Positions 23,856-62,994 of a DNA stretch of 64,000 nucleotides are shown in pieces. Both the position numbers and the translations under genes were made by a program. The notes below the pieces were generated by a model. It was not told the origin of the DNA and ran no database searches. It worked only from the letters and a program-made list of their open reading frames with translations. This DNA comes from Anthoceros angustus. Its lineage: Eukaryota; Plantae; Anthocerotophyta. Each line of letters begins with the position of its first letter. Within the stretch, counting starts at the first letter, position 1. The stretch covers positions 2,480,001 through 2,544,000 of the forward strand of contig VJWM01000025.1 in assembly GCA_010909165.1 (NCBI GenBank), read 5' to 3'.

Positions 23856-23883
23856 CATAGTTGTTTCAAATCAAAAGCGTGCC

Positions 23884-31702: not shown

Positions 31703-32305
31703 ATGGGCTCGATGGATGACTTGTCAAAACCGGGGTTGAAGCAAGTAACCACAATTGCTATTGGGGACAAGATCATTCTAAGAGATCGTGCATGTATCGT
31801 ACAAGAAATCACAAAAGGTGGAACATTCTATTTTTGAGGGGAGGATATCTTCACGCAACAAGAAGTTCAAGAATATGTTCTATATTCCAAGCAATGTTAC
31901 ACATTTGAGGTTTTATGTACAAAGTACTCGATGATGTCAACAAGTCAAGTATATGGAGGACCAAAATGCGCCACGTTGAAACATGAACAAAATGATAAAA
32001 CGTAGTTCTTCACCTTCCTCGAGATGAGAAACTTGATCGGTGCTTAGAAGATGGATTACTAAACGGAAAACACTTATCGATGATCGTATTGTCCATTTCA
32101 AAGGGTATTGAAAATTCCAAAGAGTTTCGTATAGAATATCTATATGACATAAATTCAATAGAACCGCTTTGGAGCGATTCACGGACCATGTTAAATATGC
32201 ATGTTGAAAATGCAATTGGTACTGTGAGAATCAAAGATTAAATCAAACTCACGTGTAAATCTTTGGAAGTACTATTCCTCCATTGATAGCGTAATGGATA
32301 TTTGA
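31703..32305 (+). pseudogene. eIF5A-like array copy 6 (frameshifted as assembled)
   Basis: Near-identical to copy 1. Confidence 0.55.
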
Positions 32306-33647
32306 AGTTGGAGCGTGCAATGTAGTGCGCCAAAGAGTTATCTCATCTCTCAAATGATGCCTCCTCATCACCTAGGTAGGAGAGTGAGATCCGTGTTTTA
32401 TGAGTGGTTTTGGTGAGCTATTAGCCTTGTGTAGTCTTATTGTATTGAAATAAAGAGACTATTCACCACAAAATATGTAAAGTTTTATATAAATTTGCAT
32501 AGTCTACCTTGGAGCCATTAGGGCTAGGTTTTTGAGACATTGTGTTAACACCTTGCGGCGTCGATTGGTTCATGGGTCCTTAACCTAAGCATTATGTTAC
32601 TCCCTAACTTTGTCTGATACGATTACCTACCATTTGCCGAGATTGTCGAGCCAGAGCGTGAAGTCCATTATGGTGACTCACTCGTAAGTTGCCCAAGGGT
32701 GTGGTTGGTTATGGAAGGAGTGGTCCAGGTTCCCGTTCGCCTGGATTACTGCGTACATATGCATTCTTGAACTCTTGCTATAGCAAAGAGACGCCTTGAC
32801 GTCTTGTCGTGACATCATCCCGGAGGCTAGCGGGCTATGCCTGGCACTACACCATGCAGCCATGAAGGCTAATTACGCAGGGCTACTCACAATAGTCTTT
32901 ATGCCCTTTTGGCACGATGGGCCATCCAATGTGACTGTCTTGATTGGCAATCACAATATCATCCGGTGTGGAGTGCTCATTTCGAGAACTAGCCGACTAA
33001 TGTGCACATTCCGGCTATAAATGTCGTTAGTATCTTATTCAATCCCTCATAGATTGTGAGCAGCAATTAAGCGTTTAAGATCTACACAAAATATAAGAAA
33101 AACCACACCGAGTAGACCGATAGTGATAGTGATTAACATCACAAGTTATTCCAAAAATAAAGAGAAAGCTTCCTCCGCCTTTCTAAACACCAAAACCCGA
33201 GCCCAAGGAAACTTTTACAAATTCATCAAATGTGTTTAAGATACAACAACTCAAAAGGCCAAAGAAACTTTTACAAATTCATCAAGGTGTCCAAAATTCA
33301 AAACTCAAAAGCCAAGGAAACTTTTACAAATTCCTCAATAATGTGTATTAGACACGAAAACTCAAAGCACCAGAAAAATTTTATAAATTCACCGATGTGT
33401 CTTACACACAAAGTCTCAAAACCCAAGGAAGCTTTCACAAAATCATTGCTATATATGTACCCTTGAGCAAGTGACTTATTACATCGTGGTAATCGCAAGC
33501 ATCACTAAACGTTGCATTTTCCAAGGAAAATTTCACAAAATCATTATGTATGTAGCCCCGAGCACGTGACATATTACGTGGTAATTGCAAGCATCACCGA
33601 ACGGTTGGATTTTTCTACATAGTTGTTTCTCAAATCAAAAGCGTGCC

Positions 33648-34243
33648 ATGGGCTGGATGACTTGTCAAAACCGGGGTTGACAAGTAACCACAATTGCTAT
33701 TGGGGACAAGATCATTCTAAGAGATCGTGCATGTATCGTACAAGAAATCACAAAAGGTGGAACATTCTATTTTTGAGGGGAGGATATCTTCACGCAACAA
33801 GAAGTTCAAGAATATGTTCTATATTCCAAGCAATGTTACACATTTGAGGTTTTATGTACAAAGTACTCGATGATGTCAACAAGTCAAGTATATGGAGGAC
33901 CAAAATGCGTCACGTTGAAACATGAACAAAATGATAAAACGTAGTTCTTCACCTTCCTCGAGATGAGAAACTTGATCGGTGCTTAGAAGATGGATTACTA
34001 AACGGAAAACACTTATCGATGATCGTATTGTCCATTTCAAAGGGTATTGAAAATTCCAAAGAGTTTCGTATAGAATATCTATATGACATAAATTCAATAG
34101 AACCGCTTTGGAGCGATTCGGACCATGTTAAATATGCATGTTGAAAATGCAATTGGTGGCCACCGGAGAATCAAAGATTAAATCAAACTCACGTGTAAAT
34201 CTTTGAAGTACTATTCTCCATTGATAGCGTAATGGATATTTGA
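33648..34243 (+). pseudogene. eIF5A-like array copy 7 (frameshifted as assembled)
   Basis: Near-identical to copy 1. Confidence 0.55.
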
Positions 34244-35594
34244 AGTTGGAGCGTGCAATGTAGTGCGCCAAAGAGTTATCTCATCTCTCAAATGATGCCT
34301 CCTCATCACCTAGGTAGGAGAGTGAGATCCGTGTTTTATGAGTGGTTTTGGTGAGCTATTAGCCTTGTGTAGTCTTATTGTATTGAAATAAAGAGACTAT
34401 TCACCACAAAATATGTAAAGTTTTATATAAATTTGCATCAGATACCTTGGAGCCATTAGGGCCAGTTTTTGAGACATTGTGTTAACACCTTACGATCGCT
34501 GGTTCATGGGTCCTTAACCTAAGCATTATGTTACTCCCTAACTCCCGACGATTCGCCTACCATTTGCCGTAGATTGTCGAGCCCCTGTGGCGTGGAAGTC
34601 CATTATGGTGACTCACTCGTAAGTTGCCCGCAAGGGTGTGGTTGGTTATGGAAGGAGTGGTCCAGGTTCCCTATCGCCTGGATTTGCGTACATATGCATT
34701 CTTGAACTCTTGCTATAGCAAAGAGCAAAGAGAGCGTCTTGTCCGTGACATCATCCACAGGAGGCTAGCGGGCTATGCCTGCACTACACCATGCAGCCAT
34801 GAAGGCTAATTACGCACGGGCTACTCACAATAGTCTTTATGCCCTTTTGGCCGATGGGCCATCCAATTCTTGCGACCGTCTTGATTTGATCGCTAATAGC
34901 CGATCGCAAGTGTGGAGTGCTCACTTTCAAGAGAACTAGCCAGCCTAATGTGCACATTCCGGCTATAAATGTCGTTAGTATCTTATTCAATCCCTCATAG
35001 ATTGTGAGCAGCAATTAAGCGCTTAAGATCTACACAAAATATAAGAAAAACCACACCGAGTAGACCTGATAGTGATAGTGATTAACATCACAAGTTATTC
35101 CAAAAATAAAGGAAAGCTTCCTCCGTCTTTCTAAACACCAAAACCCGAGCCCAAGGAAACTTTTACAAATTCATCAAATGTGTTTAAGATACAACAACTC
35201 AAAAGGCCAAAGAAACTTTTACAAATTCATCAAGGTGTCCAAAATTCAAAACTCAAAAGCCAAGGAAACTTTTACAAATTCCTCAATAATGTGTATTAGA
35301 CACGAAAACTCAAAGCACCAGAAAAATTTTATAAATTCACCGATGTGTCTTACACACAAAGTCTCAAAACCCAAGGAAGCTTTCACAAAATCATTGCTAT
35401 ATATGTACCCTTGAGCAAGTGACTTATTACATCGTGGTAATCGCAAGCATCAAACAGTTGCATTTTCCAAGGAAAATTTCACAAAATCATTGCTATGTAT
35501 GTAGCCCGAGCACGTGACATATTACAGTGGTAATTGCAAGCATCACCGAACGGTTGGATTTTTCTACATAGTTGTTTCAAATCAAAAGCGTGCC

Positions 35595-36198
35595 ATGGGC
35601 TCGATGGATGACTTGTCAAAACCAGGTTGAAGCAAGTAACCACAATTGCTATTGGGGACAAGATCATTCTAAGAGATCGTGCATGTATCGTACAGAAATC
35701 ACAAAAGGTGGAACATTCTATTTTTGAGGGGAGGATATCTTCACGCAACAAGAAGTTCAAGAATATGTTCTATATTCCAAGCAATGTTACACATTTGAGG
35801 TTTTATGTACAAAGTACTCGATGATGTCAACAAGTCAAGTATATGGAGGACCAAAATGCGCCACGTTGAAACATGAACAAAATGATAAAACGTAGTTCTT
35901 CACCTTCCTCGAGATGAGAAACTTGATCGGTGCTTAGAAGATGGATTACTAAACGGAAAACACTTATCGATGATCGTATTGTCCATTTCAAAGGGTATTG
36001 AAAATTCCAAAGAGTTTCGTATAGAATATCTATATGACATAAATTCAATAGAACCGCTTTGGAGCGATTCTGGGACCATGTTAAATATGCATGTTGAAAA
36101 TGCAATTGGTGGCCACCGGAGAATCAAAGATTAAATCAAACTCACGTGTAAATCTTTGGAAGTACTATTCCTCCATTGATAGCGTAATGGATATTTGA
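35595..36198 (+). pseudogene. eIF5A-like array copy 8 (frameshifted as assembled)
   Basis: Near-identical to copy 1. Confidence 0.55.
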
Positions 36199-37548
36199 AG
36201 TTGGAGCGTGCAATGTAGTGCGCCAAAGAGTTATCTCATCTCTCAAATGATGCCTCCTCATCACCTAGGTAGGAGAGTGAGATCCGTGTTTTATGAGTGG
36301 TTTTGGTGAGCTATTAGCCTTGTGTAGTCTTATTGTATTGAAATAAAGAGACTATTCACCACAAAATATGTAAAGTTTTATATAAATTTGCATCGTATAC
36401 CTTGGAGCCATTAGGGCCAGTTTTTGAGACATTGTGTTAACACCTTGCGGCGATCGATGGTTCATGGGTCCTTAACCTAAGCATTATGTTACTCCCTAAC
36501 CTCGACACGATTCGCCTACCATTTGCCGTAGATTGTCGAGCCCCATGGCGTGGAAGTCCATTATGGTGACTCACTCGTAAGTTGCCGCAAGGGTGTGGTT
36601 GGTTATGGAAGGAGTGGTCCGGGGTTCTGTTATCGCTGGATTTCTGCAGACATATGCATTCTTGAACTCTTGCTATAGCAAAGAGCAAGAGACGCGTCTT
36701 ATGACATCATCCCCTGGAGGCTAGCGGGCTATGCACGCACTACACCATGCAGCCATGAAGGCTAATTACGCACGGGCTACTCACAATAGTCTTTATGCCC
36801 TTTTGGCCTGATGGGCCATCCAATTCGGCTTTGACTTGATTGGCCCAATCACTAATGGCCCGATCAGTGTGGAGTGCTCGCCAAGAGAACTAGCTGCTAA
36901 TGTGCACATTCCGGCTATAAATGTCGTTAGTATCTTATTCAATCCCTCATAGATTGTGAGCAGAATTAAGCGTTTAAGATCTACACAAAATATAAGAAAA
37001 ACCACACCGAGTAGACCCGATAGTGATAGTGATTAACATCACAAGTTATTCCAAAAATAAAGGAGCTTCCTCCGCCTTTCTAAACACCAAAACCCGAGCC
37101 CAAGGAAACTTTTACAAATTCATCAAATGTGTTTAAGATACAACAACTCAAAAGGCCAAAGAAACTTTTACAAATTCATCAAGGTGTCCAAAATTCAAAA
37201 CTCAAAAGCCAAGGAAACTTTTACAAATTCCTCAATAATAATGTATTAGACACGAAAACTCAAAGCACCAGAAAAATTTTATAAATTCACCGATGTGTCT
37301 TACACACAAAGTCTCAAAACCCAAGGAAGCTTTCACAAAATCATTGCTATATATGTACCCTTGAGCAAGTGACTTATTACATCGTGGTAATCGCAAGCAT
37401 CACTAAACGTTGCATTTTCCAAGGAAAATTTCACAAAATCATTGCTATGTATGTAGCCCGAGCACGTGACATATTACAGTGGTAATTGCAAGCATCACCG
37501 AACGGTTGGATTTTTCTACATAGTTGTTTACGAAATCAAAAGCGTGCC

Positions 37549-38152
37549 ATGGGCTCGATGGATGACTTGTCAAAACCGAGGTTGAAGCAAGTAACCACAA
37601 TTGCTATTGGGGACAAGATCATTCTAAGAGATCGTGCATGTATCGTATACAAGAAATCACAAAGGTGGAACATTCTATTTTTTGAGGGGAGGATATCTTC
37701 ACGCAACAAGAAGTTCAAGAATATGTTCTATATTCCAAGCAATGTTACACATTTGAGGTTTTATGTACAAAGTACTCGATGATGTCAACAAGTCAAGTAT
37801 ATGGAGGACCAAAATGCGTCACGTTGAAACATGAACAAAATGATAAAACGTAGTTCTTCACCTTCCTCGAGATGAGAAACTTGATCGGTGCTTAGAAGAT
37901 GGATTACAAACGGAAAACACTTATCGATGATCGTATTGTCCATTTCAAAGGGTATTGAAAATTCCAAAGAGTTTCGTATAGAATATCTATATGACATAAA
38001 TTCAATAGAACCGCTTTGGATTCTGGGACCATGTTAAATATGCATGTTGAAAAATGCAATTGGTGGCCACCGGAGAATCAAAGATTAAATCAAACTCACG
38101 TGTAAATCTTTGGAAGTACTATTCCTCCATTGATAGCGTAATGGATATTTGA
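37549..38152 (+). pseudogene. eIF5A-like array copy 9 (frameshifted as assembled)
   Basis: Near-identical to copy 1. Confidence 0.55.
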
Positions 38153-39503
38153 AGTTGGAGCGTGCAATGTAGTGCGCCAAAGAGTTATCTCATCTCTCAA
38201 ATGATGCCTCCTCATCACCTAGGTAGGAGAGTGAGATCCGTGTTTTATGAGTGGTTTTGGTGAGCTATTAGCCTTGTGTAGTCTTATTGTATTGAAATAA
38301 AGAGACTATTCACCACAAAATATGTAAAGTTTTATATAAATTTGCATCGTATACCTTGGAGCCATTAGGGCCAGTTTTTGAGACATTGTGTTAACACCTT
38401 ACGATCGTGGTTCATGGGTCCTTAACCTAAGCATTATGTTACTCCCTAACTTTGTCTACGATTCGCCTACCATTTGCCGTAGATTGTCGAGCCCATAGCG
38501 TGGAAGTCCATTATGGTGACTCACTCGTAAGTTGCCCGCAAGGGTGTGGTTGGTTATGGAAGGAGTGGTCAGGTTCCACGTTATCGCTGGATTTACCGTA
38601 CATATGCATTCTTGAACTCTTGCTATAGCAAAGAGCAACAGCGATGAGCGTCTTGTGCGTGACATCATCCACAGGAGGCTAGCGGGCTATGCCTGGCACT
38701 ACACCATGCGCCATGAAGGCTAATTACGACGGGCTACTCACAATAGTCTTTATGCCCTTTTGGCCTGATGGGCCATCCAATTCGCCGACTGTCTTGATTG
38801 GCCCAATCGGGCTAATGGCCCGATCGCCAAGTGTGGAGTGCTCACAAGAGAACTAGCCACTAATGTGCACATTCCGGCTATAAATGTCGTTAGTATCTTA
38901 TTCAATCCTCATAGATTGTGAGCAGCAATTAAGCGTTTAAGATCTACACAAAATATAAGAAAAACCACACTGAGTAGACCCGATAGTGATAGTGATTAAC
39001 ATCACAAGTTATTCCAAAAATAAAGGAAGCTTCCTCCGCCTTTCTAAACACCAAAACCCGAGCCCAAGGAAACTTTTACAAATTCATCAAATGTGTTTAA
39101 GATACAACAACTCAAAAGGCCAAAGAAACTTTTACAAATTCATCAAGGTGTCCAAAATTCAAAACTCAAAAGCCAAGGAAACTTTTACAAATTCCTCAAT
39201 AATGTGTATTAGACACGAAAACTCAAAAGCACCAAAATTTTATAAATTCACCGATGTGTCTTACACAAAGTCTCAAAACCCAAGGAAGCTTTCACAAAAT
39301 CATTGCTATATATGTACCCTTGAGCAAGTGACTTATTACATCGTGGTAATCGCAAGCATCACTAAACGTTGCATTTTCCAAGGAAAATTTCACAAAATCA
39401 TTGCTATGTATGTAGCCCGAGCACGTGACATATTACAGTGGTAATTGCAAGCATCACCGAACGGTTGGATTTTTCTACATAGTTGTTTACGAAATCAAAA
39501 GCC

Positions 39504-40108
39504 ATGGGCTCGATGGATGACTTGTCAAAACCGTGGTTGAAGCAAGTAACCACAATTGCTATTGGGGACAAGATCATTCTAAGAGATCGTGCATGTATCG
39601 TACAAGAAATCACAAAAGGTGGAACATTCTATTTTTGAGGAGGATATCTTCACGCAACAAGAAGTTCAAGAATATGTTCTATATTCCAAGCAATGTTACA
39701 CATTTGAGGTTTTATGTACAAAGTACTCGATGATGTCAACAAGTCAAGTATATGGAGGACCAAAATGCGTCACGTTGAAACATGAACAAAATGATAAAAC
39801 GTAGTTCTTCACCTTCCTCGAGATGAGAAACTTGATCGGTGCTTAGAAGATGGATTACTAAACGGAAAACACTTATCGATGATCGTATTGTCCATTTCAA
39901 AGGGTATTGAAAATTCCAAAGAGTTTCGTATAGAATATCTATATGACATAAATTCAATAGAACCGCTTTGGAGCGATTCACGGACCATGTTAAATATGCA
40001 TGTTGAAAAATGCAATTGGTGGCCACCGGAGAATCAAAGATTAAATCAAACTCACGTGTAAATCTTTGGAAGTACTATTCCTCCATTGATAGCGTAATGG
40101 ATATTTGA
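39504..40108 (+). pseudogene. eIF5A-like array copy 10 (frameshifted as assembled)
   Basis: Near-identical to copy 1. Confidence 0.55.
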
Positions 40109-41455
40109 AGTTGGAGCGTGCAATGTAGTGCGCCAAAGAGTTATCTCATCTCTCAAATGATGCCTCCTCATCACCTAGGTAGGAGAGTGAGATCCGTGTT
40201 TTATGAGTGGTTTTGGTGAGCTATTAGCCTTGTGTAGTCTTATTGTATTGAAATAAAGAGACTATTCACCACAAAATATGTAAAGTTTTATATAAATTTG
40301 CATCGATACCTTGGAGCCATTAGGGCCAGTTTTTGAGACATTGTGTTAACACCTTGCGACGTATCGCTGGTTCATGGGTCCTTAACCTAAGCATTATGTT
40401 ACTCCCTAACCTGTCCTGATACGATTCGGCCTACCATTTGCCGTAGATTGTCGAGCCCTGTGGCGTGGAAGTCCATTATGGTGACTCACTCGTAAGTTGC
40501 CCGCAAGGGTGTGGTTGGTTATGGAAGGAGTGGTCCAGGTTCTGTTATCGCTTTATTTACTGCATGCATTCTTGAACTCTTGCTATAGCAAAGAGCAACA
40601 GATGACGTCTTATGCCATCATCACAGGAGGCTAGCGGGCTATGCCCGGCACTACACCATGCGACCATGAAGGCTAATTACGACGGGCTACTCACAATAGT
40701 CTTTATGCCCTTTTGGCACGATGGGCCATCCAATTGCCGAGTCTTGATTGGTAATGGCTCGATCGCGAAGTGTGGAGTGCTCATTTCGATAGAACTAGCC
40801 AGCTAATGTGCACATTCCGGCTATAAATGTCGTTAGTATCTTATTCAATCCCTCATAGATTGTGAGCAGCAATTAAGCGTTTAAGATCTACACAAAATAT
40901 AAGAAAAACCACACCGAGTAGACCCGATAGTGATAGTGATTAACATCACAAGTTATTCCAAAAATAAAGGAAAGCTTCCTCCGTCTTTCTAAACACCAAA
41001 ACCCGAGCCCAAGGAAACTTTTACAAATTCATCAAATGTGTTTAAGATACAACAACTCAAAAGGCCAAAGAAACTTTTACAAATTCATCAAGGTGTCCAA
41101 AATTCAAACTCAAAAGCCAAGGAAACTTTTACAAATTCCTCAATAATGTGTATTAGACACGAAAACTCAAAGCACCGGAAAATTTTATAAATTCACCGAT
41201 GTGTCTTACACACAAAGTCTCAAAACCCAAGGAAGCTTTCACAAAATCATTGCTATATATGTACCCTTGAGCAAGTGACTTATTACATCGTGGTAATCGT
41301 AAGCATCACTAAACGGTTGCATTTTCCAAGGAAAATTTCACAAAATCATTGCTATGTATGTAGCCCCGAGCACGTGACATATTACAGTGGTAATTGCAAG
41401 CATCACCGAGCAGTTGGATTTTTCTACATAGTTGTTTCGAAATCAAAAGCGTGCC

Positions 41456-42058
41456 ATGGGCTCGATGGATGACTTGTCAAAACCAGGTTGAAGCAAGTAA
41501 CCACAATTGCTATTGGGGACAAGATCATTCTAAGAGATCGTGCATGTATCGTACAAGAAATCACAAAAGGTGGAACATTCTATTTTTGAGGGGAGGATAT
41601 CTTCACGCAACAAGAAGTTCAAGAATATGTTCTATATTCCAAGCAATGTTACACATTTGAGGTTTTATGTACAAAGTACTCGATGATGTCAACAAGTCAA
41701 GTATATGGAGGACCAAAATGCGTCACGTTGAAACATGAACAAAATGATAAAAGCGTAGTTCTTCACCTTCCTCGAGATGAGAAACTTGATCGGTGCTTAG
41801 AAGATGGATTACGAACGGAAAACACTTATCGATGATCGTATTGTCCATTTCAAAGGGTATTGAAAATTCCAAAGAGTTTCGTATAGAATATCTATATGAC
41901 ATAAATTCAATAGAACCGCTTTGGAGCGATTACGGGACCATGTTAAATATGCATGTTGAAAATGCAATTGGTGGCCAGGAGAATCAAAGATTAAATCAAA
42001 CTCACGTGTAAATCTTTGGAAGTACTATTCCTCCATTGATAGCGTAATGGATATTTGA
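41456..42058 (+). pseudogene. eIF5A-like array copy 11 (frameshifted as assembled)
   Basis: Near-identical to copy 1. Confidence 0.55.
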
Positions 42059-43408
42059 AGTTGGGCGTGCAATGTAGTGCGCCAAAGAGTTATCTCATCT
42101 CTCAAATGATGCCTCCTCATCACCTAGGTAGGAGAGTGAGATCCGTGTTTTATGAGTGGTTTTGGTGAGCTATTAGCCTTGTGTAGTCTTATTGTATTGA
42201 AATAAAGAGACTATTCACCACAAAATATGTAAAGTTTTATATAAATTTGCATAGTCTACCTTGGAGCCATTAGGGCTAGGTTTTTGAGACATTGTGTTAA
42301 CACCTTACGGCGTATCGTTGGTTCATGGGTCCTTAACCTAAGCATTATGTTACTCCTAACGTCACGATACGATTCGCCTACCATTTGCCGTAGATTGTCG
42401 AGCCAGCGTGGAAGTCCATTATGGTGACTCACTCGTAAGTTGCCCGCAAGGTGTGGTTGGTTATGGAAGGAGTGGTCCAGGTTCTGTTATGCACGGATTT
42501 ACTGCGTACATATGCATTCTTGAACTCTTGCTATAGCAAAACAACGATGACGTCTTATGCGTGACATCATCCACGGAGGCTAGCGGGCTATGCCTGGCAC
42601 TACACCATGCACGACCATGAAGGCTAATTACGCACGGGCTACTCACAATAGTCTTTATGCCCTTTTGGCACGATGGGCCATCCAATTCTTGACTGACCGT
42701 CTTGATTGGTCGGGCTAATAGATCACGAGTGTGGAGTGCTCGACTTTCGAGAACTAGCCAGCTAATGTGCACATTCCGGCTATAAATGTCGTTAGTATCT
42801 TATTCAATCCCTCATAGATTGTGAGAATTAAGCGTTTAAGATCTACACAAAATATAAGAAAAACCACACCGAGTAGACCCGATAGTGATAGTGATTAACA
42901 TCACAAGTTATTCCAAAAATAAAGGAAAGCTTCCTCCGTCTTTCTAAACACCAAAACCCGAGCCCAAGGAAACTTTTACAAATTCATCAAATGTGTTTAA
43001 GATACAACAACTCAAAAGGCCAAAGAAACTTTTACAAATTCATCAAGGTGTCCAAAATTCAAACTCAAAAGCCAAGGAAACTTTTACAAATTCTCAATAA
43101 TGTGTATTAGACACGAAAACTCAAAGCACCAGAAAATTTTATAAATTCACGATGTGTCTTACACACAAAGTCTCAAAACCAAGGAAGCTTTCACAAAATC
43201 ATTGCTATATATGTACCCTTGAGCAAGTGACTTATTACATCGTGGTAATCGCAAGCATCACTAAGCAGTTGCATTTTCCAAGGAAAATTTCACAAAATCA
43301 TTGCTATGTATGTAGCCCGAGCACGTGACATATTACACAGTGGTAATTGCAAGCATCACCGAACGGTTGGATTTTTCTACATAGTTGTTTCGAAATCAAA
43401 AGCGTGCC

Positions 43409-44009
43409 ATGGGCTCGATGGATGACTTGTCAAAACCGGGGTTGAAGCAAGTAACCACAATTGCTATTGGGGACAAGATCATTCTAAGAGATCGTGCATG
43501 TATCGTACAAGAAATCACAAAAGGTGGAACATTCTATTTTTGAGGAGGATATCTTCACGCAACAAGAAGTTCAAGAATATGTTCTATATTCCAAGCAATG
43601 TTACACATTTGAGGTTTTATGTACAAAGTACTCGATGATGTCAACAAGTCAAGTATATGGAGGACCAAAATGCGTCACGTTGAAACATGAACAAAATGAT
43701 AAAACGTAGTTCTTCACCTTCCTCGAGATGAGAAACTTGATCGGTGCTTAGAAGATGGATTACGAACGGAAAACACTTATCGATGATCGTATTGTCCATT
43801 TCAAAGGGTATTGAAAATTCCAAAGAGTTTCGTATAGAATATCTATATGACATAAATTCAATAGAACCGCTTTGGAGCGATTCACGGACCATGTTAAATA
43901 TGCATGTTGAAAATGCAATTGGTGGCCACCGGAGAATCAAAGATTAAATCAAACTCACGTAAATCTTTGGAAGTACTATTCCTCCATTGATAGCGTAATG
44001 GATATTTGA
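43409..44009 (+). pseudogene. eIF5A-like array copy 12 (frameshifted as assembled)
   Basis: Near-identical to copy 1. Confidence 0.55.
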
Positions 44010-45341
44010 AGTTGGAGCGTGCAATGTAGTGCGCCAAAGAGTTATCTCATCTCTCAAATGATGCCTCCTCATCACCTAGGTAGGAGAGTGAGATCCGTGT
44101 TTTATGAGTGGTTTTGGTGAGCTATTAGCCTTGTGTAGTCTTATTGTATTGAAATAAAGAGACTATTCACCACAAAATATGTAAAGTTTTATATAAATTT
44201 GCATCGTATACCTTGGAGCCATTAGGGCCGCTTTTGAGACATTGTGTTAACACCTTGCGACGTGTCATGGTTCATGGGTCCTTAACCTAAGCATTATGTT
44301 ACTCCCTAACTGTCTGATACGATTATACCATTTGCCGTAGATTGTCGAGCCACAGCGTGGAAGTCCATTATGGTGACTCACTCGTAAGTTGCCCGCAAGG
44401 GTGTGGTTGGTTATGGAAGGAGTGGTCCGGGGTTCTGTTATCGCTGGATTACTGCGTACATATGCATTCTTGAACTCTTGCTATAGCAAAGAGCAACGAT
44501 GAGCGTCTTATGCGTGACATCATCCACAGGAGGCTAGCGGGCTGCCTCGGCACTACACCATGCATGAAGGCTAATTACACGGGCTACTCACAATAGTCTT
44601 TATGCCTTTTGGCGATGGGCCATCCAATTCGACTGCCGTCTTGATTGGCCCAATCGGGCTAATGTGATAAGTGTGGAGTGCTCATTTCGAGAACTAGCCT
44701 AATGTGCACATTCCGGCTATAAATGTCGTTAGTATCTTATTCAATCCCTCATAGATTGTGAGCAGCAATTAAGCGTTTAAGATCTACACAAAATATAAGA
44801 AAAACCACACGAGTAGACCCATAATTTTTATCAATAGTGATTAACATCACAAGTTATTCCAAAAATAAAGGAAAGCTTCCTCCGCCTTTCTAAACACCAA
44901 AACCCAAGGAAACTTTTACAAATTCATCAAATGTGTTTAAGATACAACAACTCAAAAGAAACTTTTACAAATTCATCAAGGTGTCCAAAATTCAAAACTC
45001 AAAAGCCAAGGAAACTTTTACAAATTCCTCAATAATGTGTATTAGACACGAAAACTCAAAGCACCAGAAAAATTTTATAAATTCACGATGTGTCTTACAC
45101 ACAAAGTCTCAAAACCCAAGGAAGCTTTCACAAAATCATTGCTATATATGTACCCTTGAGCAAGTGACTTATTACATCGTGGTAATCGCAAGCATCACTA
45201 AGCGGTTGCATTTTCCAAGGAAAATTTCACAAAATCATTGCTATGTATGTAGCACGAGCACGTGACATATTACAGTGGTAATTGCAAGCATCACCGAGCG
45301 GTTGGATTTTTCTACATAGTTGTTTAAATCAAAAGCGTGCC

Positions 45342-45941
45342 ATGGGCTCGTGGATGACTTGTCAAAACCAGGTTGAAGCAAGTAACCACAATTGCTATTG
45401 GGGACAAGATCATTCTAAGAGATCGTGCATGTATCGTACAAGAAATCACAAAAGGTGGAACATTCTATTTTTGAGGGGAGGATATCTTCACGCAACAAGA
45501 AGTTCAAGAATATGTTCTATATTCCAAGCAATGTTACACATTTGAGGTTTTATGTACAAAGTACTCGATGATGTCAACAAGTCAAGTATATGGAGGACCA
45601 AAATGCGTCACGTTGAAACATGAACAAAATGATAAAAAATAGTTCTTCACCTTCCTCGAGATGAGAAACTTGATCGGTGCTTAGAAGATGGATTAAACGG
45701 AAAACACTTATCGATGATCGTATTGTCCATTTCAAAGGGTATTGAAAATTCCAAAGAGTTTAGATAGAATATCTATATGACATAAATTCAATAGAACCGC
45801 TTTGGAGCGATTACGGGACCATGTTAAATATGCATGTTGAAAATGCAATTGGTGGCCACCGGAGAATCAAAGATTAAATCAAACTCACGTGTAAATCTTT
45901 GGAAGTACTATTCCTCCATTGATAGCGTAATGGATATTTGA
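45342..45941 (+). pseudogene. eIF5A-like array copy 13 (frameshifted as assembled)
   Basis: Near-identical to copy 1. Confidence 0.55.
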
Positions 45942-47273
45942 AGTTGGAGCGTGCAATGTAGTGCGCCAAAGAGTTATCTCATCTCTCAAATGATGCCTCC
46001 TCATCACCTAGGTAGGAGAGTGAGATCCGTGTTTTATGAGTGGTTTTGGTGAGCTATTAGCCTTGTGTAGTCTTATTGTATTGAAATAAAGAGACTATTC
46101 ACCACAAAATATGTAAAGTTTTATATAAATTTGCATCAGATACCTTGGAGCCATTAGGGCCGCTTTTTGAGACATTGTGTTAACACCTTGCGACGTGTCG
46201 GTGGTTCATGGGTCCTTAACCTAAGCATTATGTTACTCCCTAACTGTCTGATCGATTACCATTTGCCGTGGTGATTGAGCGTGGAAGTCCATTATGGTGA
46301 CTCACTCGTAAGTTGCCCGCAAGGGTGTGGTTGGTTATGGAAGGAGTGGTCCAGGTTCTGTTATCGCTGGATTTGCGTACATATGCATTCTTGAACTCTT
46401 GCTATAGCAAAGAGCAACGATGACGCCTTGTCTGTGACATCATCCACAGGAGGCTAGCGGGCTATGCCCCGGCACTACACCATGCGCCATGAAGGCTAAT
46501 TACGCACGGGCTACTCACAATAGTCTTTATGCCCGCACGATGGGCCATCCAATTGCGACGTCTTGATTGGCCCAATCGGGCTAATGGCCCGATCGTGAAG
46601 TGTGGAGTGCTCGACTTCGATAGAACTAGCTAATGTGCACATTCTATAAATGTCGTTAGTATCTTATTCAATCCCTCATAGATTGTGAGCGAATTAAGCG
46701 TTTAAGATCTACACAAAATATAAGAAAAACCACGAGTAGACCCGATAATTTTTATCAATAGTGATTAACATCACAAGTTATTCCAAAAATAAAGGAAGCT
46801 TCCTCCGCCTTTCTAAACACCAAAACCCGAGCCCAAGGAAACTTTTACAAATTCATCAAATGTGTTTAAGATACAACAACTCAAAAGGCCAAAGAAACTT
46901 TTACAAATTCATCAAGGTGTCCAAAATTCAAAAACTCAAAAGCCAAGGAAACTTTTACAAATTCCTCAATAATGTGTATTAGACACGAAAACTCAAAGCA
47001 CCGGAAAATTTTATAAATTCACCGATGTGTCTTACACACAAAGTCTCAAAACCCAAGGAAGCTTTCACAAAATCATTGCTATATATGTACCCTTGAGCAA
47101 GTGACTTATTACATCGTGGTAATCAAGCATCACGGTTGCATTTTCCAAGGAAAATTTCACAAAATCATTGCTATGTATGTAGCCCGAGCACGTGACATAT
47201 TACAGTGGTAATTGCAAGCATCACCGAACGGTTGGATTTTTCTACATAGTTGTTTCGAAATCAAAAGCGTGCC

Positions 47274-47880
47274 ATGGGCTCGTGGATGACTTGTCAAAAC
47301 CGAGGGTTGAAGCAAGTAACCACAATTGCTATTGGGGACAAGATCATTCTAAGAGATCGTGCATGTATCGTACAAGAAATCACAAAAGGTGGAACATTCT
47401 ATTTTTTGAGGGGAGGATATCTTCACGCAACAAGAAGTTCAAGAATATGTTCTATATTCCAAGCAATGTTACACATTTGAGGTTTTATGTACAAAGTACT
47501 CGATGATGTCAACAAGTCAAGTATATGGAGGACCAAAATGCGCCACGTTGAAACATGAACAAAATGATAAAACGTAGTTCTTCACCTTCCTCGAGATGAG
47601 AAACTTGATCGGTGCTTAGAAGATGGATTACGAACGGAAAACACTTATCGATGATCGTATTGTCCATTTCAAAGGGTATTGAAAATTCCAAAGAGTTTCA
47701 GATAGAATATCTATATGACATAAATTCAATAGAACCGCTTTGGAGCGATTACGGGACCATGTTAAATATGCATGTTGAAAATGCAATTGGTGGCCACCAG
47801 GAGAATCAAAGATTAAATCAAACTCACGTGTAAATCTTTGGAAGTACTATTCCTCCATTGATAGCGTAATGGATATTTGA
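47274..47880 (+). pseudogene. eIF5A-like array copy 14 (frameshifted as assembled)
   Basis: Near-identical to copy 1. Confidence 0.55.
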
Positions 47881-49280
47881 AGTTGGAGCGTGCAATGTAG
47901 TGCGCCAAAGAGTTATCTCATCTCTCAAATGATGCCTCCTCATCACCTAGGTAGGAGAGTGAGATCCGTGTTTTATGAGTGGTTTTGGTGAGCTATTAGC
48001 CTTGTGTAGTCTTATTGTATTGAAATAAAGAGACTATTCACCACAAAATATGTAAAGTTTTATATAAATTTGCATCAGTATACCTTGGAGCCATTAGGGC
48101 CGTTTTTGAGACATTGTGTTAACACCTTGCGACGATCTGGTTCATGGGTCCTTAACCTAAGCATTATGTTACTCCCTAACTGTCTGATACGATTCGCCTA
48201 CCATTTGCCGTAGATTGTCGAGCCTGTGGCGTGGAAGTCCATTATGGTGACTCACTCGTAAGTTGCCCGCAAGGGTGTGGTTGGTTATGGAAGGAGTGGT
48301 CCAGGTTCTGTTATCGCTGGATTTACATATGCATTCTTGAACTCTTGCTATAGCAAAGAGCAACGATGACGTCTTGTCGTGACATCATCCTCGGAGGCTA
48401 GCGGGCTATGCCTGGCACTACACCATGCACCATGAAGGCTAATTACGCACGGCTACTCACAATAGTCTTTATGCCCTTTTGGCGATGGGCCATCCAATTC
48501 GGCGACCGTCTTGATTGGTAATGGCTCGATCGCGAAGTGTGGAGTGCTCGAGAGAACTAGCCACTAATGTGCACATTCCGGCTATAAATGTCGTTAGTAT
48601 CTTATTCAATCCCTCATAGATTGTGAGCAGCAATTAAGCGTTTAAGATCTACACAAAATATAAGAAAAACCACACCGAGTAGACCCGATAATTTTTATCA
48701 ATAGTGATTAACATCACAAGTTATTCCAAAAATAAAGGAAGCTTCCCTGTCTTTCTAAACACCAAAACCCGAGCCCAAGGAAACTTTTACAAATTCATCA
48801 AATGTGTTTAAGATACAACAACTCAAAAGGCCAAAGAAACTTTTACAAATTCATCAAATGTGTTTAAGATACAACAACTCAAAAGACCAAAGAAACTTTT
48901 ACAAATTCATCAAGGTGTCCAAAATTCAAAAACTCAAAAGCCAAGGAAACTTTTACAAATTCCTCAATAATGTGTATTAGACACGAAAACTCAAAAGCAC
49001 CAGAAAAATTTTATAAATTCACCGATGTGTCTTACACACAAAGTCTCAAAACCCAAGGAAGCTTTCACAAAATCATTGCTATATATGTACCCTTGAGCAA
49101 GTGACTTATTACATCGTGGTAATCGCAAGCATCACTAAACGGTTGCATTTTCCAAGGAAAATTTCACAAAATCATTGCTATGTATGTAGCCCCGAGCACG
49201 TGACATATTACAGTGGTAATTGCAAGCATCACCGAACGGTTGGACTTTTCTACATAGTTGTTTCAAATCAAAAGCGTGCC

Positions 49281-49882
49281 ATGGGCTCGATGGATGACTT
49301 GTCAAAACCGTGGTTGAAGCAAGTAACCACAATTGCTATTGGGGACAAGATCATTCTAAGAGATCGTGGATGTATCGACAAGAAATCACAAAAGGTGGAA
49401 CATTCTATTTTTGAGGGGAGGATATCTTCACGCAACAAGAAGTTCAAGAATATGTTCTATATTCCAAGCAATGTTACACATTTGAGGTTTTATGTACAAA
49501 GTACTCGATGATGTCAACAAGTCAAGTATATGGAGGACCAAAATGCGCCACGTTGAAACATGAACAAAATGATAAAACGTAGTTCTTCACCTTCCTCGAG
49601 ATGAGAAACTTGATCGGTGCTTAGAAGATGGATTACGAACGGAAAACACTTATCGATGATCGTATTGTCCATTTCAAAGGGTATTGAAAATTCCAAAGAG
49701 TTTCGTATAGAATATCTATATGACATAAATTCAATAGAACCGCTTTGGAGCGATTCGGGACCATGTTAAATATGCATGTTGAAAATGCAATTGGTGGCCA
49801 CCAGAGAATCAAAGATTAAATCAAACTCACGTGTAAATCTTTGAAGTACTATTCCTCCATTGATAGCGTAATGGATATTTGA
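49281..49882 (+). pseudogene. eIF5A-like array copy 15 (frameshifted as assembled)
   Basis: Near-identical to copy 1. Confidence 0.55.
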
Positions 49883-50215
49883 AGTTGGAGCGTGCAATGT
49901 AGTGCGCCAAAGAGTTATCTCATCTCTCAAATGATGCCTCCTCATCACCTAGGTAGGAGAGTGAGATCCGTGTTTTATGAGTGGTTTTGGTGAGCTATTA
50001 GCCTTGTGTAGTCTTATTGTATTGAAATAAAGAGACTATTCACCACAAAATATGTAAAGTTTTATATAAATTTGCATAGTCTACCTTGGAGCCATTAGGG
50101 CTAGGTTTTTGAGACATTGTGTTAACACCTTGCGACGTATCAGTGGTTCATGGGTTTGCAACTTGTAGTTCTAGCGCCGTCAACTTCATCAGAGCCTGCG
50201 TTTCACACCTTGTGA

Positions 50216-54460: not shown

Positions 54461-54504
54461 TTCCCATCGTTTTTTCCCCTTTTAGCTGTATTGCGCCATG
54501 AAAG

Positions 54505-59710: not shown

Positions 59711-60266
59711 GTACGCTCCACATGCAGAAGGAGGCCGGCCATCCCGCCAATTTGTATTCCCGATTCACCCACCAACTGGAGTTTGTTACCAACCGTGCAC
59801 AGGAAATGCGACAACCGGTCGTGGTAAGAGGTAAAGTAACGGATCGGTTAGGTGAGCAGGTGTGCATGCTGCGCTACTCTCGTATCCACGATCAAAGAGG
59901 TATATGTTATCCTTAGAAAGGAATAAATACTTACTATTGTCTACTCTATTTCATTATATTTATCAAATTTATTGAGTTTGAAAATAGATAAAATTTTGTT
60001 TTAGTTAATATTACCACTACAAGTTCATCCTCTTACAGCTTAAAAGGAAACCTTTGCCTCCCTATTTCTAACACACAATCTTGGCCACAGAATTATTACT
60101 AATAATATCTTGTACACTAAAACTCAAAGCCCAAGGAAACTTTCACAAAATCATCCCTATATAATATGTTGTCTTGAGTATGTGATCTATTACATCGTAG
60201 TAATTGCAAGCATTAACAAAGAATAAGTTTTTTCGACATAGTTGTTTCTGAAATCAATAGATTGCT

Positions 60267-60860
60267 ATGGACTCAATGAATCATTTGTCAGATCCACATT
60301 TGAAACAAGTAGCTACTGTTGTTATCGGAGACAAGATCCTTCTAGGGAGTCGGCCATGTATCATACAAGAGAACACAAAAGCTGGAAAGTTTTATTTTTT
60401 GAGGGGAGAAGACATTTTCACGCATCAAGAAGTTCGAGAGTATATCTTACATTCCAAGCAATGTTACATGGTTGAGGTTTTACGTGCAAAGTACTTAGTG
60501 ATGTCAGCAAATCAAGCATCTCAAGGACCGAAATGTGTTACGTTGAGACATGAACACAATGATGAAATCCTAGTTTTTCAGCTTCCTCGTGATGAGAAAC
60601 TTGATCTTCTTTTAGAAGAAGGACTACGAAAAGGAAAACATTTATTGATGACCGTACTGTACATCTTGAAGGGAACCGAAAAATCCAAAGAGTTTCGTTT
60701 TGAAGATCTATATGAAATAAATTCGACGGAACCCCTTTGGAGTAGTTGTACGAACCTATTGGATATGCACGGTGCAAAATGCAATTCGTCACCAAAAGAA
60801 TCGAAGATTTTAAATCCAAACGCACCTATAAACCTTTGGGAGTACTATCGCCTCCATTGA
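60267..60860 (+). CDS. Divergent eIF5A-like protein with a broken hypusine loop (intact 197-aa solo paralog of the array gene), intronless
   Basis: RPC, DIFT, S..C...V.R..Y, LP.D..L and G..GK.L...V motifs occur in eIF5A order and spacing. [12 protein letters not shown] is replaced by NTKAGK. There is a ~50-aa C-terminal extension. Confidence 0.8.
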   Translation: MDSMNHLSDPHLKQVATVVIGDKILLGSRPCIIQENTKAGKFYFLRGEDIFTHQEVREYILHSKQCYMVEVLRAKYLVMSANQASQGPKCVTLRHEHNDEILVFQLPRDEKLDLLLEEGLRKGKHLLMTVLYILKGTEKSKEFRFEDLYEINSTEPLWSSCTNLLDMHGAKCNSSPKESKILNPNAPINLWEYYRLH

Positions 60861-61480
60861 TAATATACCAGTTAATCAATGTTGGAATGGCCATGGAATG
60901 CAGCAATGAGCTATGTTATCTCTCATATGGTTCCTTCTTGGTCACCTAGCTGGGGAGTTTGAGCCGTGTCTTGTAATTGGAGTCAAAGGACCCCATGGAG
61001 CACATATAACGTAAATGGTAGTCTCAATGAGCTAATTAAGCTCAACAACAAGAAGGCAAGAAGCGGCAGCGGTTACCATGAAGTTGTTGGCGTCAACCTT
61101 AATGAGCTAATTAAGGCTGGCATGCTGGTTACTATACAAAAGGTCCATGGCAAGGAGACATAGCACCGAGGATGATGCTCGGGGGGCAAAAATACGTGTA
61201 TCCAAGTTGTAGGCCTGCAATATCCATCAAAGCAATGTTGTAATGTGAGTTTCAAACCTGATGACCAGTATCACACTTGTTTTCGCGTCAGTTTCGGAGG
61301 GCAATTATTTGTCCTAGGGCCTTGGGACCTTCATTTTTATCAATGTTCATTCTAGGTTTTCCATAGTCCAAGGAATATTTTGCTATATATGCTTGGAGGA
61401 GCCATCAATCATATTTATTAGTAGGCAAGCTTAAGGCTTTGAGCACCTACCGTTGATATAGTGGAGGCTTGGACGTTTTT

Positions 61481-62594: not shown

Positions 62595-62958
62595 GCCGTG
62601 GAGGGCACCAGCTGGATGACTTGTCACTATCATAGCATCGTCATCGCCATGTTCATGGCCATCACCTTGTTGCTTGCACATATACGCTCCGCATGAAGGA
62701 GGCCCGCCATCCCGCCAATTTGTATTCCTTCTAATTCACCTGCCAACTACACTTTGTTACCAACCGTACGTGCTCAGGAATTGCGACGACCGGTCGTGGT
62801 AAGAGGTGAAGCAACGGATAATGTTACATGGTTGAGGTTTTACTTCCCAAGTACTCAGCGATGTCAACAAATCAAGCATCTCAAGGACCGAAATGGGTTA
62901 CGTTGAGACATGAACACAATGATAAAAACCTAGTTTTTCAGCTTCCTCGTTATGAGAA
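62595..62958 (+). pseudogene. Chimeric duplicated fragment: ABCG 5' region (~59598-59844) fused to an internal eIF5A-like segment (~60461-60599)
   Basis: atcccgccaatttgtattcc and ccggtcgtggtaagaggt are shared with 59741-59832; atgttacatggttgaggttttac...cagcttcctcgt is shared with 60461-60590. Confidence 0.85.
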
Positions 62959-62994
62959 ATGCTGTTCAAATGGGAGCAACGACACTTAGGGAAC

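What the first reader, a model, noticed from the sequence alone, without database searches (positions are those of the whole stretch)
60267..60860. Intact eIF5A paralog with the hypusination motif deleted: a possible HEX-1-like neofunctionalisation in a plant
Manual alignment to plant eIF5A (recalled) matches both the N-terminal SH3-like and the C-terminal OB domains. The loop [24 protein letters not shown] is about 6 residues shorter here (ENTKAGKFYFLRGEDIFT). A Lys remains but HGHAK is gone, and the array copies read TKGGT, with the Lys replaced by Thr. The protein therefore should not be a deoxyhypusine synthase substrate or a normal elongation factor. IGDKILLGSRPC also recalls HEX-1 LGDILILQGRPC. 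It has an extra ~50-aa tail, no PTS1 and no introns, so it may be a retrogene or a transfer.
Basis: partly seen in the sequence, partly recalled or inferred. Interest (0 to 1): 0.8.

Follow-up and report, generated by a model that had tools for sequence, protein, structure and literature searches.

The report
Hypusine-less eIF5A-derived gene in a plant
A non-seed land plant carries an intact, intron-free and very strongly diverged copy of the universal translation factor eIF5A that has lost the loop carrying the factor's unique hypusine modification, so it probably does something other than help ribosomes; whether it is expressed, and what it does, is unknown.

Summary
Window 60267-60860 (+) is an uninterrupted 197-codon ORF. 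Curated models (Pfam, NCBIfam) miss it, but remote homology to eIF5A across both domains is significant. An eIF5A HMM that I built from 31 environmental sequences scores it 20.2 bits, while none of 20,000 shuffles exceeds 8.8. hhalign gives E 9e-7 and BLASTP against a plant-type eIF5A gives E 7e-11. The hypusine hairpin is 6 residues shorter and the [10 protein letters not shown] motif is gone. One Lys (K41) aligns with the hypusine Lys; the array copies have Thr there. The basic-N/acidic-C charge pattern of eIF5A is lost, and a tail of about 55 aa is added. Compared with the tandem-array paralogue, Ka/Ks is 0.41 (p 5e-5) and the promoter block is conserved, so the gene was probably kept by selection. 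It is as far from eIF5A as bacterial EF-P, and much further than fungal HEX-1. Nothing specifically supports the HEX-1 idea: no HEX-1 hit, no PTS1, and assembly could not be tested. Structure prediction failed (pLDDT below 40), there is no expression evidence, and no relatives were found in public protein sets, although this lineage is poorly sampled there. This scan has already noted the same family twice in this genome: the 15-copy array in this window and another intact copy on a different piece.

The parts
60131..60266 (+). Conserved upstream block (putative core promoter plus 5' UTR) with a TATA-like element TATATAA at 60158-60164, about 103 nt before the ATG
   Evidence: This block is 79% identical to the corresponding block of the array units, against 62.5% for the 3' flank and about 63% at synonymous sites. 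The sequence was read. Promoter function is inferred, not shown.
60267..60860 (+). Intact intronless CDS, 197 codons plus TGA: an eIF5A-derived protein
   Evidence: The ORF is listed. Homology to eIF5A rests. Ka/Ks against the array paralogue is 0.41.
60294..60476 (+). Residues about 10-70: counterpart of the eIF5A N-terminal SH3-like domain (GDKILLGSRPC ... EDIFT)
   Evidence: hhalign and HMM alignments. Net charge is 0, against a mean of +5.7 (range +3 to +8) in 31 eIF5As.
60366..60407 (+). Residues 34-47 (QENTKAGKFYFLRG): shortened hypusine hairpin, 6 residues shorter, HGHAK lost, K41 at the hypusine-Lys position
   Evidence: The gaps of 2 + 4 residues appear in the HMMER, hhalign and BLASTP alignments.
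60477..60686 (+). Residues about 71-140: counterpart of the eIF5A C-terminal OB domain (LPRDEKLDLLLEEGLRKGKHLLMTVL matches the helix-strand motif)
   Evidence: Net charge is +2, against a mean of -10 (range -13 to -6) in eIF5As.
60687..60857 (+). Residues 141-197: added C-terminal tail with no eIF5A counterpart. The motifs EPLWS and NLWEYY are shared with the array copies. It ends in RLH, which is not a PTS1
   Evidence: Alignment A1 and tblastn. Ka/Ks is 0.35 for residues 141-168 and 0.73 for 171-194, from few sites.
60861..60980 (+). 3' flank still alignable to the array units (62.5% identity)
62642..62959 (+). Decayed partial second copy. 62642-62819 duplicates 59671-59844 (the ABCG 5' end and its upstream region, 84-90%). 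62820-62959 duplicates codons 66-111 of the gene (93% nt, 80% aa, 9 nonsynonymous and 1 synonymous change)
21776..50100 (+). Tandem array of 15 units of about 1.95 kb. Each holds a paralogue of this gene (about 64% aa and 76-78% nt identity to the singleton) and reads TKGGT in the hairpin
   Evidence: This is a separate finding of the scan (s1-662781).

Best explanation
This is a protein-coding member of a lineage-specific, multi-copy gene family. The family arose from a plant eIF5A gene, probably through an intronless (retro)copy, and then diverged extremely fast. The protein keeps the sequence pattern of the two-domain eIF5A scaffold (SH3-like N-domain plus OB C-domain). Its hypusine hairpin is 6 residues shorter and the [10 protein letters not shown] motif is lost. 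The basic-N/acidic-C charge pattern that eIF5A uses towards DHS, rRNA and tRNA is gone, and a new tail of about 55 residues has been added. I infer that deoxyhypusine synthase cannot modify it and that it no longer works as the hypusine-dependent elongation and termination factor at the ribosomal E site. It more likely acts as a hypusine-independent binding module, using the now neutral-to-basic OB domain plus the Trp-rich tail to bind a protein or nucleic acid, with a new function that remains unknown. Shown here: the homology, the hairpin truncation, the charge change, the intact ORF and Ka/Ks below 1. Inferred: no hypusination, no ribosome function, retroposition and a new binding role.
For: Homology is supported by several searches. 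phmmer against the PDB returns only eIF5A chains as its top three hits, and a family profile reaches E 0.0013. An independent eIF5A HMM scores the protein 20.2 bits (p about 2e-8), and scores the array copy 11.7 bits, while none of 20,000 shuffles exceeds 8.8 bits. hhalign gives E 9e-7 over 129 columns. The plant-type eIF5A L071 is by far the best single match, at 27.3 bits against at most 14.4 for the other 30 sequences, with BLASTP E 7e-11. The hairpin gaps and the K41 alignment appear. The DHS tunnel takes the loop 46-SKTGKHGHA-54, and binding relies on a positively charged N-domain (PMC10042821). Here the N-domain charge is 0 against +5.7, and the C-domain +2 against -10. Selection is supported by Ka/Ks 0.41 (43 of 117 synonymous against 83 of 456 nonsynonymous differences, Fisher p 4.9e-5). 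The promoter block is 79% conserved, against 62.5% for the 3' flank. In a neutral simulation the ORF stays open in only 0.14% of runs at 0.25 substitutions per site, even ignoring indels. Earlier scan notes report another intact copy elsewhere in the genome.
Against: There is no evidence of expression. The exact protein is not on record, and no homologue was found among 5.8 billion proteins (word search) or 1.84 billion representatives. Curated eIF5A models (PF21485, PF01287, TIGR00037) do not detect the protein. Both AlphaFold runs are unusable, with pLDDT 39 and 36, so the fold is inferred from sequence only. Ka/Ks of 0.41 is a weak constraint, and it is averaged over two lineages, one of which (the array) may be dead. 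Relative-rate tests could not assign the changes to either lineage. GC3 of 35% is atypical beside neighbours with GC3 of 69-78%, as expected for young, weakly expressed or repeat-associated genes. A Lys remains at the hypusine position, so modification is not formally excluded.
Confidence: 0.6

Rival explanations
1. It is a non-functional relic. On this view the ORF is a decaying (retro)copy, or part of a repeat unit, that merely happens still to be open. The Ka/Ks below 1 would reflect an early functional period or selection on the other lineage.
For: No expression evidence or database relatives were found. A decayed fragment copy lies 2 kb downstream with 9 nonsynonymous and 1 synonymous change. 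As assembled, the 15 array paralogues carry stops and frameshifts. GC3 is low. The protein is extremely divergent from eIF5A, at 20 bits, the same level as EF-P.
Against: The 197-codon ORF is intact despite dS of about 0.5 to its paralogue, and the neutral simulation gives about 0.1% at half that distance. Ka/Ks is significantly below 1 (p 4.9e-5). There are no frameshifts relative to the paralogue over 194 codons, while the flanks have indels. The promoter block is conserved. Many of the array 'breaks' sit at CpG-associated indel hot spots that look like assembly noise, so even the array copies may not be dead.
Confidence: 0.25
2. It is a HEX-1-like neofunctionalisation. On this view the protein self-assembles into a crystalline or dense body that serves a structural role such as plugging, as the Woronin-body protein does in Pezizomycotina.
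For: Both are eIF5A-derived and both have lost hypusination. The gene dosage (15-copy array plus further copies) would suit an abundant structural protein. This is analogy only.
Against: None of the seven distinct HEX-1 sequences in the PDB is matched at E<=10 by the protein or by its family profile, although the eIF5A profile finds them at 53-64 bits. The C-terminus RLH is not a PTS1. The best matches are plant eIF5A. Nothing could be said about the lattice contacts because the models are unusable.
Confidence: 0.04
3. It is still a ribosome-associated factor. On this view it either is hypusinated at K41 or binds the E site without hypusine, as the eIF5A-like domain of Nmd3 does on pre-60S particles, and acts as a modulator or competitor of eIF5A.
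For: K41 aligns with the hypusine Lys within T-K-A-G-K, corresponding to S-K-T-G-K. The two-domain pattern is retained. A hypusine-free eIF5A-like E-site ligand has a precedent in Nmd3 (PMC6795138, listed; its role is from my own knowledge).
Against: The hairpin is 6 residues shorter, so the tip cannot reach as far. HGHAK is lost. The N-domain charge is 0 instead of +3 to +8, and the C-domain is no longer acidic. The array paralogues have Thr at the Lys position, so the family as a whole does not conserve it.
Confidence: 0.07
4. It is not eIF5A-derived at all (chance similarity), or it was acquired by horizontal transfer from a fungus, protist or giant virus.
For: Pfam and NCBIfam give no hit. 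Its composition differs from that of its neighbours. Giant-virus contigs do encode eIF5A.
Against: Against chance, none of 20,000 shuffles reaches even half the observed score, hhalign gives E 9e-7, and the array copy independently scores 11.7 bits. Against transfer, the top matches are Arabidopsis eIF5A-2 and the plant-type L071, while viral and other eukaryotic eIF5As score 14 bits or less.
Confidence: 0.04

Closest known systems
Plant eIF5A (for example Arabidopsis eIF5A-2, PDB 3hks; Pfam PF21485 + PF01287)
   Same: The match is collinear over both domains, with about 22-26% identity. Shared motifs include G..I....RPC, DIFT, LP.D..L and G..(K/E)GK..(L/V).(T/S)V(L/M). Plant-type eIF5A gives the best matches of all eIF5As tested.
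   Different: The hairpin is 6 residues shorter and the invariant TGKHGHAK is lost. About 16 N-terminal residues are missing and about 55 C-terminal residues are added. The charge pattern is lost (N-domain 0 against +5.7, C-domain +2 against -10). The gene has no introns. It scores only 20 bits against an eIF5A profile, where archaeal aIF5A scores 85, and it falls below the curated cut-offs.
HEX-1 / Woronin body major protein of Pezizomycotina (PDB 1khi)
   Same: It is a duplicate of eIF5A that has left translation and is no longer hypusinated. In that sense it is the only well-known precedent for this kind of event.
   Different: HEX-1 is still much closer to eIF5A, at 53-64 bits with the same profile. 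It carries a PTS1 and crystallises inside peroxisome-derived vesicles. This protein shows no specific similarity to HEX-1, has no PTS1, has a different added tail, and arose independently from a plant-type gene.
eIF5A-like domain of the 60S export adaptor Nmd3
   Same: It is a hypusine-free eIF5A-like module, which shows that the fold can be used without the modification (PMC6795138).
   Different: It is a domain inside a larger, universally conserved protein. No sequence relationship to it was tested or claimed here.
Bacterial and organellar EF-P
   Same: Its distance from the eIF5A profile is comparable, at 16-18 bits, and its length is similar at about 185-190 aa.
   Different: EF-P has a third OB domain and its own modification loop. 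This protein does not hit EF-P models or EF-P structures. Its tail is not predicted to be OB-like, and its best matches are plant eIF5A.

Membership tests
eIF5A (IF5A-like_N PF21485 + eIF-5a PF01287; TIGR00037) | Scores above the curated family thresholds | tested here: not met
   No Pfam or NCBIfam hit appears even at E<=10 for the whole protein, for its halves, or for the array copy. The positive control L071 scores 125, 80 and 134 bits.
eIF5A (IF5A-like_N PF21485 + eIF-5a PF01287; TIGR00037) | Detectable homology over both domains in the same order | tested here: met
   My own HMM scores it 20.2 bits over HMM positions 24-147, and none of 20,000 shuffles exceeds 8.8 bits. hhalign gives E 9e-7 and probability 91%. 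The PDB profile search gives E 0.0013. BLASTP against L071 gives E 7e-11.
eIF5A (IF5A-like_N PF21485 + eIF-5a PF01287; TIGR00037) | Conserved hypusination loop [10 protein letters not shown] at the tip of a long beta-hairpin | tested here: not met
   The loop reads N-T-K-A-G-K-F-Y-F-L-R, with gaps of 2 + 4 residues. Only K-x-G-K is retained. The array copies read T-K-G-G-T.
eIF5A (IF5A-like_N PF21485 + eIF-5a PF01287; TIGR00037) | SH3-like plus OB three-dimensional fold | tested here: inconclusive
   The AlphaFold2 models have pLDDT 39 and 36. Foldseek puts Leishmania eIF5A first for one model, but at E 0.027, TM about 0.3 and rmsd 12 A.
eIF5A (IF5A-like_N PF21485 + eIF-5a PF01287; TIGR00037) | Hypusinated by DHS/DOHH and active at the ribosomal E site | not testable with these tools
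   This can only be inferred from the loop truncation and the charge loss (PMC10042821).
HEX-1 (Woronin body major protein) | Sequence membership in the HEX-1 clade | tested here: not met
   Seven distinct HEX-1 sequences are in the PDB copy. None is matched at E<=10 by the protein or by its family profile.
HEX-1 (Woronin body major protein) | C-terminal PTS1 tripeptide for peroxisomal import | tested here: not met
   The C-terminus is ...EYYRLH. It does not fit the (S/A/C)-(K/R/H)-(L/M) consensus, which I cite from established knowledge.
HEX-1 (Woronin body major protein) | Self-assembly into a crystalline lattice | not testable with these tools
   The monomer models are too poor for any complex prediction, so none was attempted.
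Processed retrogene | Lacks the parental introns and shows a poly(A) remnant and target-site duplications | tested here: inconclusive
   No intron lies in the homologous region. No A-tract or flanking duplication is visible in 60861-61300. The parental gene of this genome was not available for comparing intron positions.

The most novel reading that the evidence does not exclude
A land-plant lineage, probably a hornwort, has independently repeated what Pezizomycotina did with HEX-1. It took a copy of eIF5A out of translation, stripped the hypusine loop, re-charged both domains, added a new tail, and amplified the gene (a 15-unit tandem array plus dispersed intact copies) for a new, hypusine-independent cellular function. 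This would be a second natural 'exaptation' of the eIF5A fold.
Probability: 0.3. Interest if true: 0.7.

Novelty: new variant of a known kind. Interest (0 to 1): 0.5.

Why it matters
eIF5A is one of the most conserved eukaryotic proteins and the only known substrate of hypusination. The only well-known case of the fold being reused outside translation is fungal HEX-1. A second, independent and far more diverged derivative in plants would show that the scaffold is more evolvable than is assumed. It would also provide a natural experiment on what the fold can do without hypusine, and a marker family for a poorly sampled plant lineage. The finding has a practical side too: the family is invisible to Pfam and NCBIfam, so standard annotation would label it an orphan. 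If it proves to be untranscribed, it is merely a slowly decaying retrocopy and of little interest.

Tried and rejected
1. Pfam and NCBIfam scans of the whole protein, its halves and the array copy gave no hits.
2. The word-indexed search of 5.8 billion proteins found nothing. The exhaustive phmmer search of 1.84 billion representatives returned only a spurious low-complexity repeat protein, P0001.
3. Exact look-ups of the protein, the array ORF and a neighbouring gene found none on record.
4. AlphaFold2 was run on the single sequence and on the 7-row family alignment. Both gave pLDDT below 40. Foldseek on these models gives weak eIF5A rows among noise, which I do not use as evidence.
5. The ESM Atlas feature search gave streptophyte eIF5A clusters at 0.82 and 0.79, below the level that counts. 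This is a lead only.
6. The maximum-likelihood tree with 31 eIF5As put the family on a branch of about 8.7 substitutions per site attached to a polytomy, so it does not place the gene.
7. Relative-rate tests of the singleton against the array, with eIF5A as outgroup, had too few informative sites.
8. The array copy alone does not find eIF5A in the PDB.
9. The bacterial promoter and terminator scan is irrelevant for a plant gene.
10. The literature searches I ran (eIF5A with hornwort; eIF5A with HEX-1, gene duplication and hypusine; 'eIF5A-like' with hypusine) found no paper describing a hypusine-less eIF5A paralogue, in plants or elsewhere.
11. Homo-oligomer prediction was not attempted because the monomer models are unusable.
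12. The EF-P origin and chance similarity were considered and rejected.

Full report
**The observation**

Window 60267-60860 (+) holds an uninterrupted ORF of 197 codons. It has an ATG start, and an in-frame TAG lies 9 nt upstream of the ATG.

**Is it eIF5A-derived?**

Curated libraries do not recognise the protein.
- Pfam-A gives nothing at E<=10 for the whole protein, its halves, or the best array copy.
- NCBIfam (TIGR00037 eIF_5A, TIGR00038 efp) gives nothing either.
- A plant-type eIF5A used as positive control scores 125, 80 and 134 bits in the same scans.

Several independent tests nevertheless point to eIF5A.
- phmmer against all PDB sequences returns three hits at E<=10, and all three are eIF5A. 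The best is Arabidopsis eIF5A-2 (3hks_A) at E 0.036, query 15-132 against chain 31-150. The other two are Leishmania eIF5As.
- A profile of the local family (alignment A1: the singleton plus intact pieces of the array copies) improves this to E 0.0013, with 3hks_A the only hit.
- To obtain an eIF5A profile from tool-delivered sequences, I scanned metagenome and viral contigs for DNA encoding TGKHGHAK. I extracted complete ORFs and aligned 31 of them (A2).
- An HMM built from these scores the singleton 20.2 bits (p about 2e-8 for one comparison) and array copy 1 11.7 bits.
- None of 20,000 shuffles of the protein exceeds 8.8 bits, and the reversed sequence scores -1.3.
- hhalign of A1 against A2 gives probability 91% and E 9e-7 over 129 columns, query 10-143.
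- The single best partner is L071. That sequence is plant-type: 229 bits to Arabidopsis eIF5A-2 against 186 to yeast. BLASTP of the singleton against L071 gives E 7e-11 with 26% identity over 124 residues. All other environmental and giant-virus eIF5As score 14.4 bits or less, against 27.3 for L071.

I therefore take homology to eIF5A, and a plant-type source, as well supported. The same eIF5A profile scores archaeal aIF5A at about 85 bits, fungal HEX-1 at 53-64 bits and bacterial EF-P at 16-18 bits. This protein is thus as far from eIF5A as EF-P is, and much further than HEX-1.

**Anatomy**

- Every alignment places gaps of 2 + 4 residues in the hypusine hairpin. IIQE--NTKAGKF----YFLRGEDIFT lines up with [26 protein letters not shown].
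- K38 and K41 align with the two lysines of SKTGK, so K41 occupies the hypusine position. HGHAK is gone and the hairpin is shorter.
- In the array copies the corresponding codons read T-K-G-G-T. These codons are not at a noisy site.
- Over the N-domain columns the protein has net charge 0, against a mean of +5.7 (range +3 to +8) in 31 eIF5As.
- Over the C-domain columns it has +2, against a mean of -10 (range -13 to -6).
- About 16 N-terminal residues of eIF5A are missing.
- Residues from about 143 to 197 have no counterpart in eIF5A. They are shared with the array copies (EPLWS, NLWEYY).
- The C-terminus RLH is not a PTS1.

The cryo-EM structure of human eIF5A-DHS shows that the loop 46-SKTGKHGHA-54 enters the DHS active-site tunnel. 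It also shows that binding relies on a positively charged N-domain and needs nearly the whole N-domain (PMC10042821). From this I infer that the protein is very unlikely to be deoxyhypusinated or to act like eIF5A at the peptidyl-transferase centre. This is an inference and was not tested.

**Is it a live gene?**

I compared it with the paralogue in the tandem array, using frame-preserving pieces.
- dN is 0.21 and dS 0.50, so Ka/Ks is 0.41. There are 43 synonymous differences on 117 sites and 83 nonsynonymous on 456 sites, giving Fisher p 4.9e-5.
- Ka/Ks is 0.29 for the N-domain, 0.53 for the C-domain and 0.35 for the first part of the tail.
- The 136 nt upstream of the ATG, which include a TATA-like TATATAA at 60158-60164, are 79% identical between the singleton and the array units. 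The 3' flank is 62.5% identical and synonymous sites about 63%.
- In a neutral simulation without indels, the ORF stays open in 0.14% of runs at 0.25 substitutions per site, and in 6% of runs at 0.1.

Together these results favour selection for the coding sequence during much of its history. They do not show that the gene is used today.

I found no expression evidence and no relatives.
- The exact protein is not on record.
- The word-indexed search of 5.8 billion proteins found none.
- phmmer over 1.84 billion cluster representatives found only a spurious repeat protein.

This absence is weak evidence, because the lineage is poorly sampled. A neighbouring intronless xyloglucan fucosyltransferase has its best database match at only 64% identity, in an unnamed Logan contig. 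The next matches are lycophytes, liverworts and mosses at 40-49%. That fits a non-seed land plant. Earlier notes of this scan call it a hornwort, which I could not verify.

**Context**

- The gene lies between a GC-rich ABCG transporter on the minus strand (57615-59710) and an intronless cyclin-T-like ORF (61469-62323).
- Its GC3 is 35%, against 69-78% for three neighbouring genes.
- Ten kilobases upstream lies the array of 15 units of about 1.95 kb (21.7-50.1 kb). Each unit shares 850 bp with the singleton locus: promoter block, CDS and 3' flank.
- A decayed partial second copy lies at 62642-62959.
- Earlier scan notes report a further intact copy on another piece of the genome.
- The family therefore has at least three loci. 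This scan had already found it on other DNA.

**HEX-1 and other readings**

- Seven distinct HEX-1 sequences are in the PDB copy and are found by the eIF5A profile. Neither the protein nor its family profile matches any of them at E<=10.
- The protein has no PTS1, and its source looks plant-type. HEX-1 is therefore an analogy, a precedent for eIF5A leaving translation, and not a relative.
- Self-assembly could not be tested. Both AlphaFold2 runs failed, with pLDDT 39 and 36. Foldseek on those models gives only weak eIF5A rows (E 0.027, TM about 0.3) among noise.
- A maximum-likelihood tree put the family on a branch of about 8.7 substitutions per site joined to a polytomy. Phylogeny therefore cannot separate duplication from transfer here. 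The similarity ranking favours a plant source.
- The gene is shown to be intronless. Retroposition is only inferred, because no poly(A) trace or target-site duplication is visible and the parental gene was not available.

**Verdict**

The core of its interpretation, an intact eIF5A-derived gene without the hypusination motif, is supported. The HEX-1-like function remains speculation.

My best reading, at about 0.6, is a lineage-specific, fast-evolving, probably selected eIF5A-fold protein with a new hypusine-independent binding role. The main rival, at about 0.25, is a not-yet-broken relic. I found no description of such a paralogue in the literature searches I ran. Interest is moderate until expression is shown.

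Noticed in passing
window 21776-50100: The 15 array units are almost identical except at recurrent hot columns. Of 447 variable alignment columns, 351 are indels. 48% of the variable columns lie within 2 nt of a CpG, against 21% of all columns (binomial p 3e-36). Many of the stops and frameshifts in the array genes sit at these sites, for example TTAC[G/T/-]AAACGG and AAAA[G/-]CGTAG.
   Followed up: partly
window 22180-22200 and the same site in the other array units: In 12 of the 15 units the hairpin region reads FYF*GEDIFT, because 3 nt are missing across a T-run and a G-run (T6 to T5, G6 to G4) relative to unit 1, which reads FYFLRGEDIFT like the singleton. This is either a shared real in-frame lesion creating TGA or a systematic homopolymer error. 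I could not decide between them.
   Followed up: no
window 61469-62323 (+): An intronless 284-codon ORF with cyclin N-terminal and cyclin-T2-like C-terminal domains (Pfam E 1e-17 and 1e-8) lies 600 bp downstream of the eIF5A-like gene. Its GC3 is 49%, intermediate between the eIF5A-like gene and the GC-rich neighbours. It may be another retrocopy in the same AT-rich stretch.
   Followed up: no
window 62642-62959: This stretch is a chimeric partial duplicate. A copy of the ABCG 5' end and upstream region (59671-59844, 84-90%) is joined directly to codons 66-111 of the eIF5A-like gene (60460-60599, 93%), so 615 bp are missing between the two. It lies beyond the cyclin ORF. This suggests an older tandem duplication of the ABCG-5'/eIF5A-like segment that was later disrupted.
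   Followed up: partly
window 57615-59710 (-): The ABCG half-transporter is split into two ORFs in different frames that overlap at 58223-58229 (ABC_tran in 58223-59710, ABC2_membrane in 57615-58229). It starts with a (GH)n/(GD)n low-complexity N-terminus. The break could be a frameshift, a short intron or an assembly error.
   Followed up: no
window 21677-21874 and 23439-23851, repeated in each array unit: The promoter block of the array gene is itself tandemly duplicated inside each unit. There are two 99-bp copies, one with TATATATG, preceded by 4.4 copies of a 54-56-bp derivative (CCAAGGAAACTTTTACAAATTCATCAA...). The singleton locus has one copy.
   Followed up: no
window 54495-54856: A separate 42-bp minisatellite of about 8.6 copies (GCCATGAAGGTGGAGATGGATAGCACCCCATCCAAGCACTAG), flanked by 113-114-bp duplications. 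It is unrelated to the finding.
   Followed up: no
loci L122-L136 (IMG/VR giant-virus contigs): Eighteen viral contigs, many labelled GVMAG, carry the TGKHGHAK motif. Eleven of the 31 complete eIF5A ORFs in alignment A2 come from them, so canonical eIF5A with an intact hypusine loop is common in giant-virus bins. None is close to the plant protein.
   Followed up: partly
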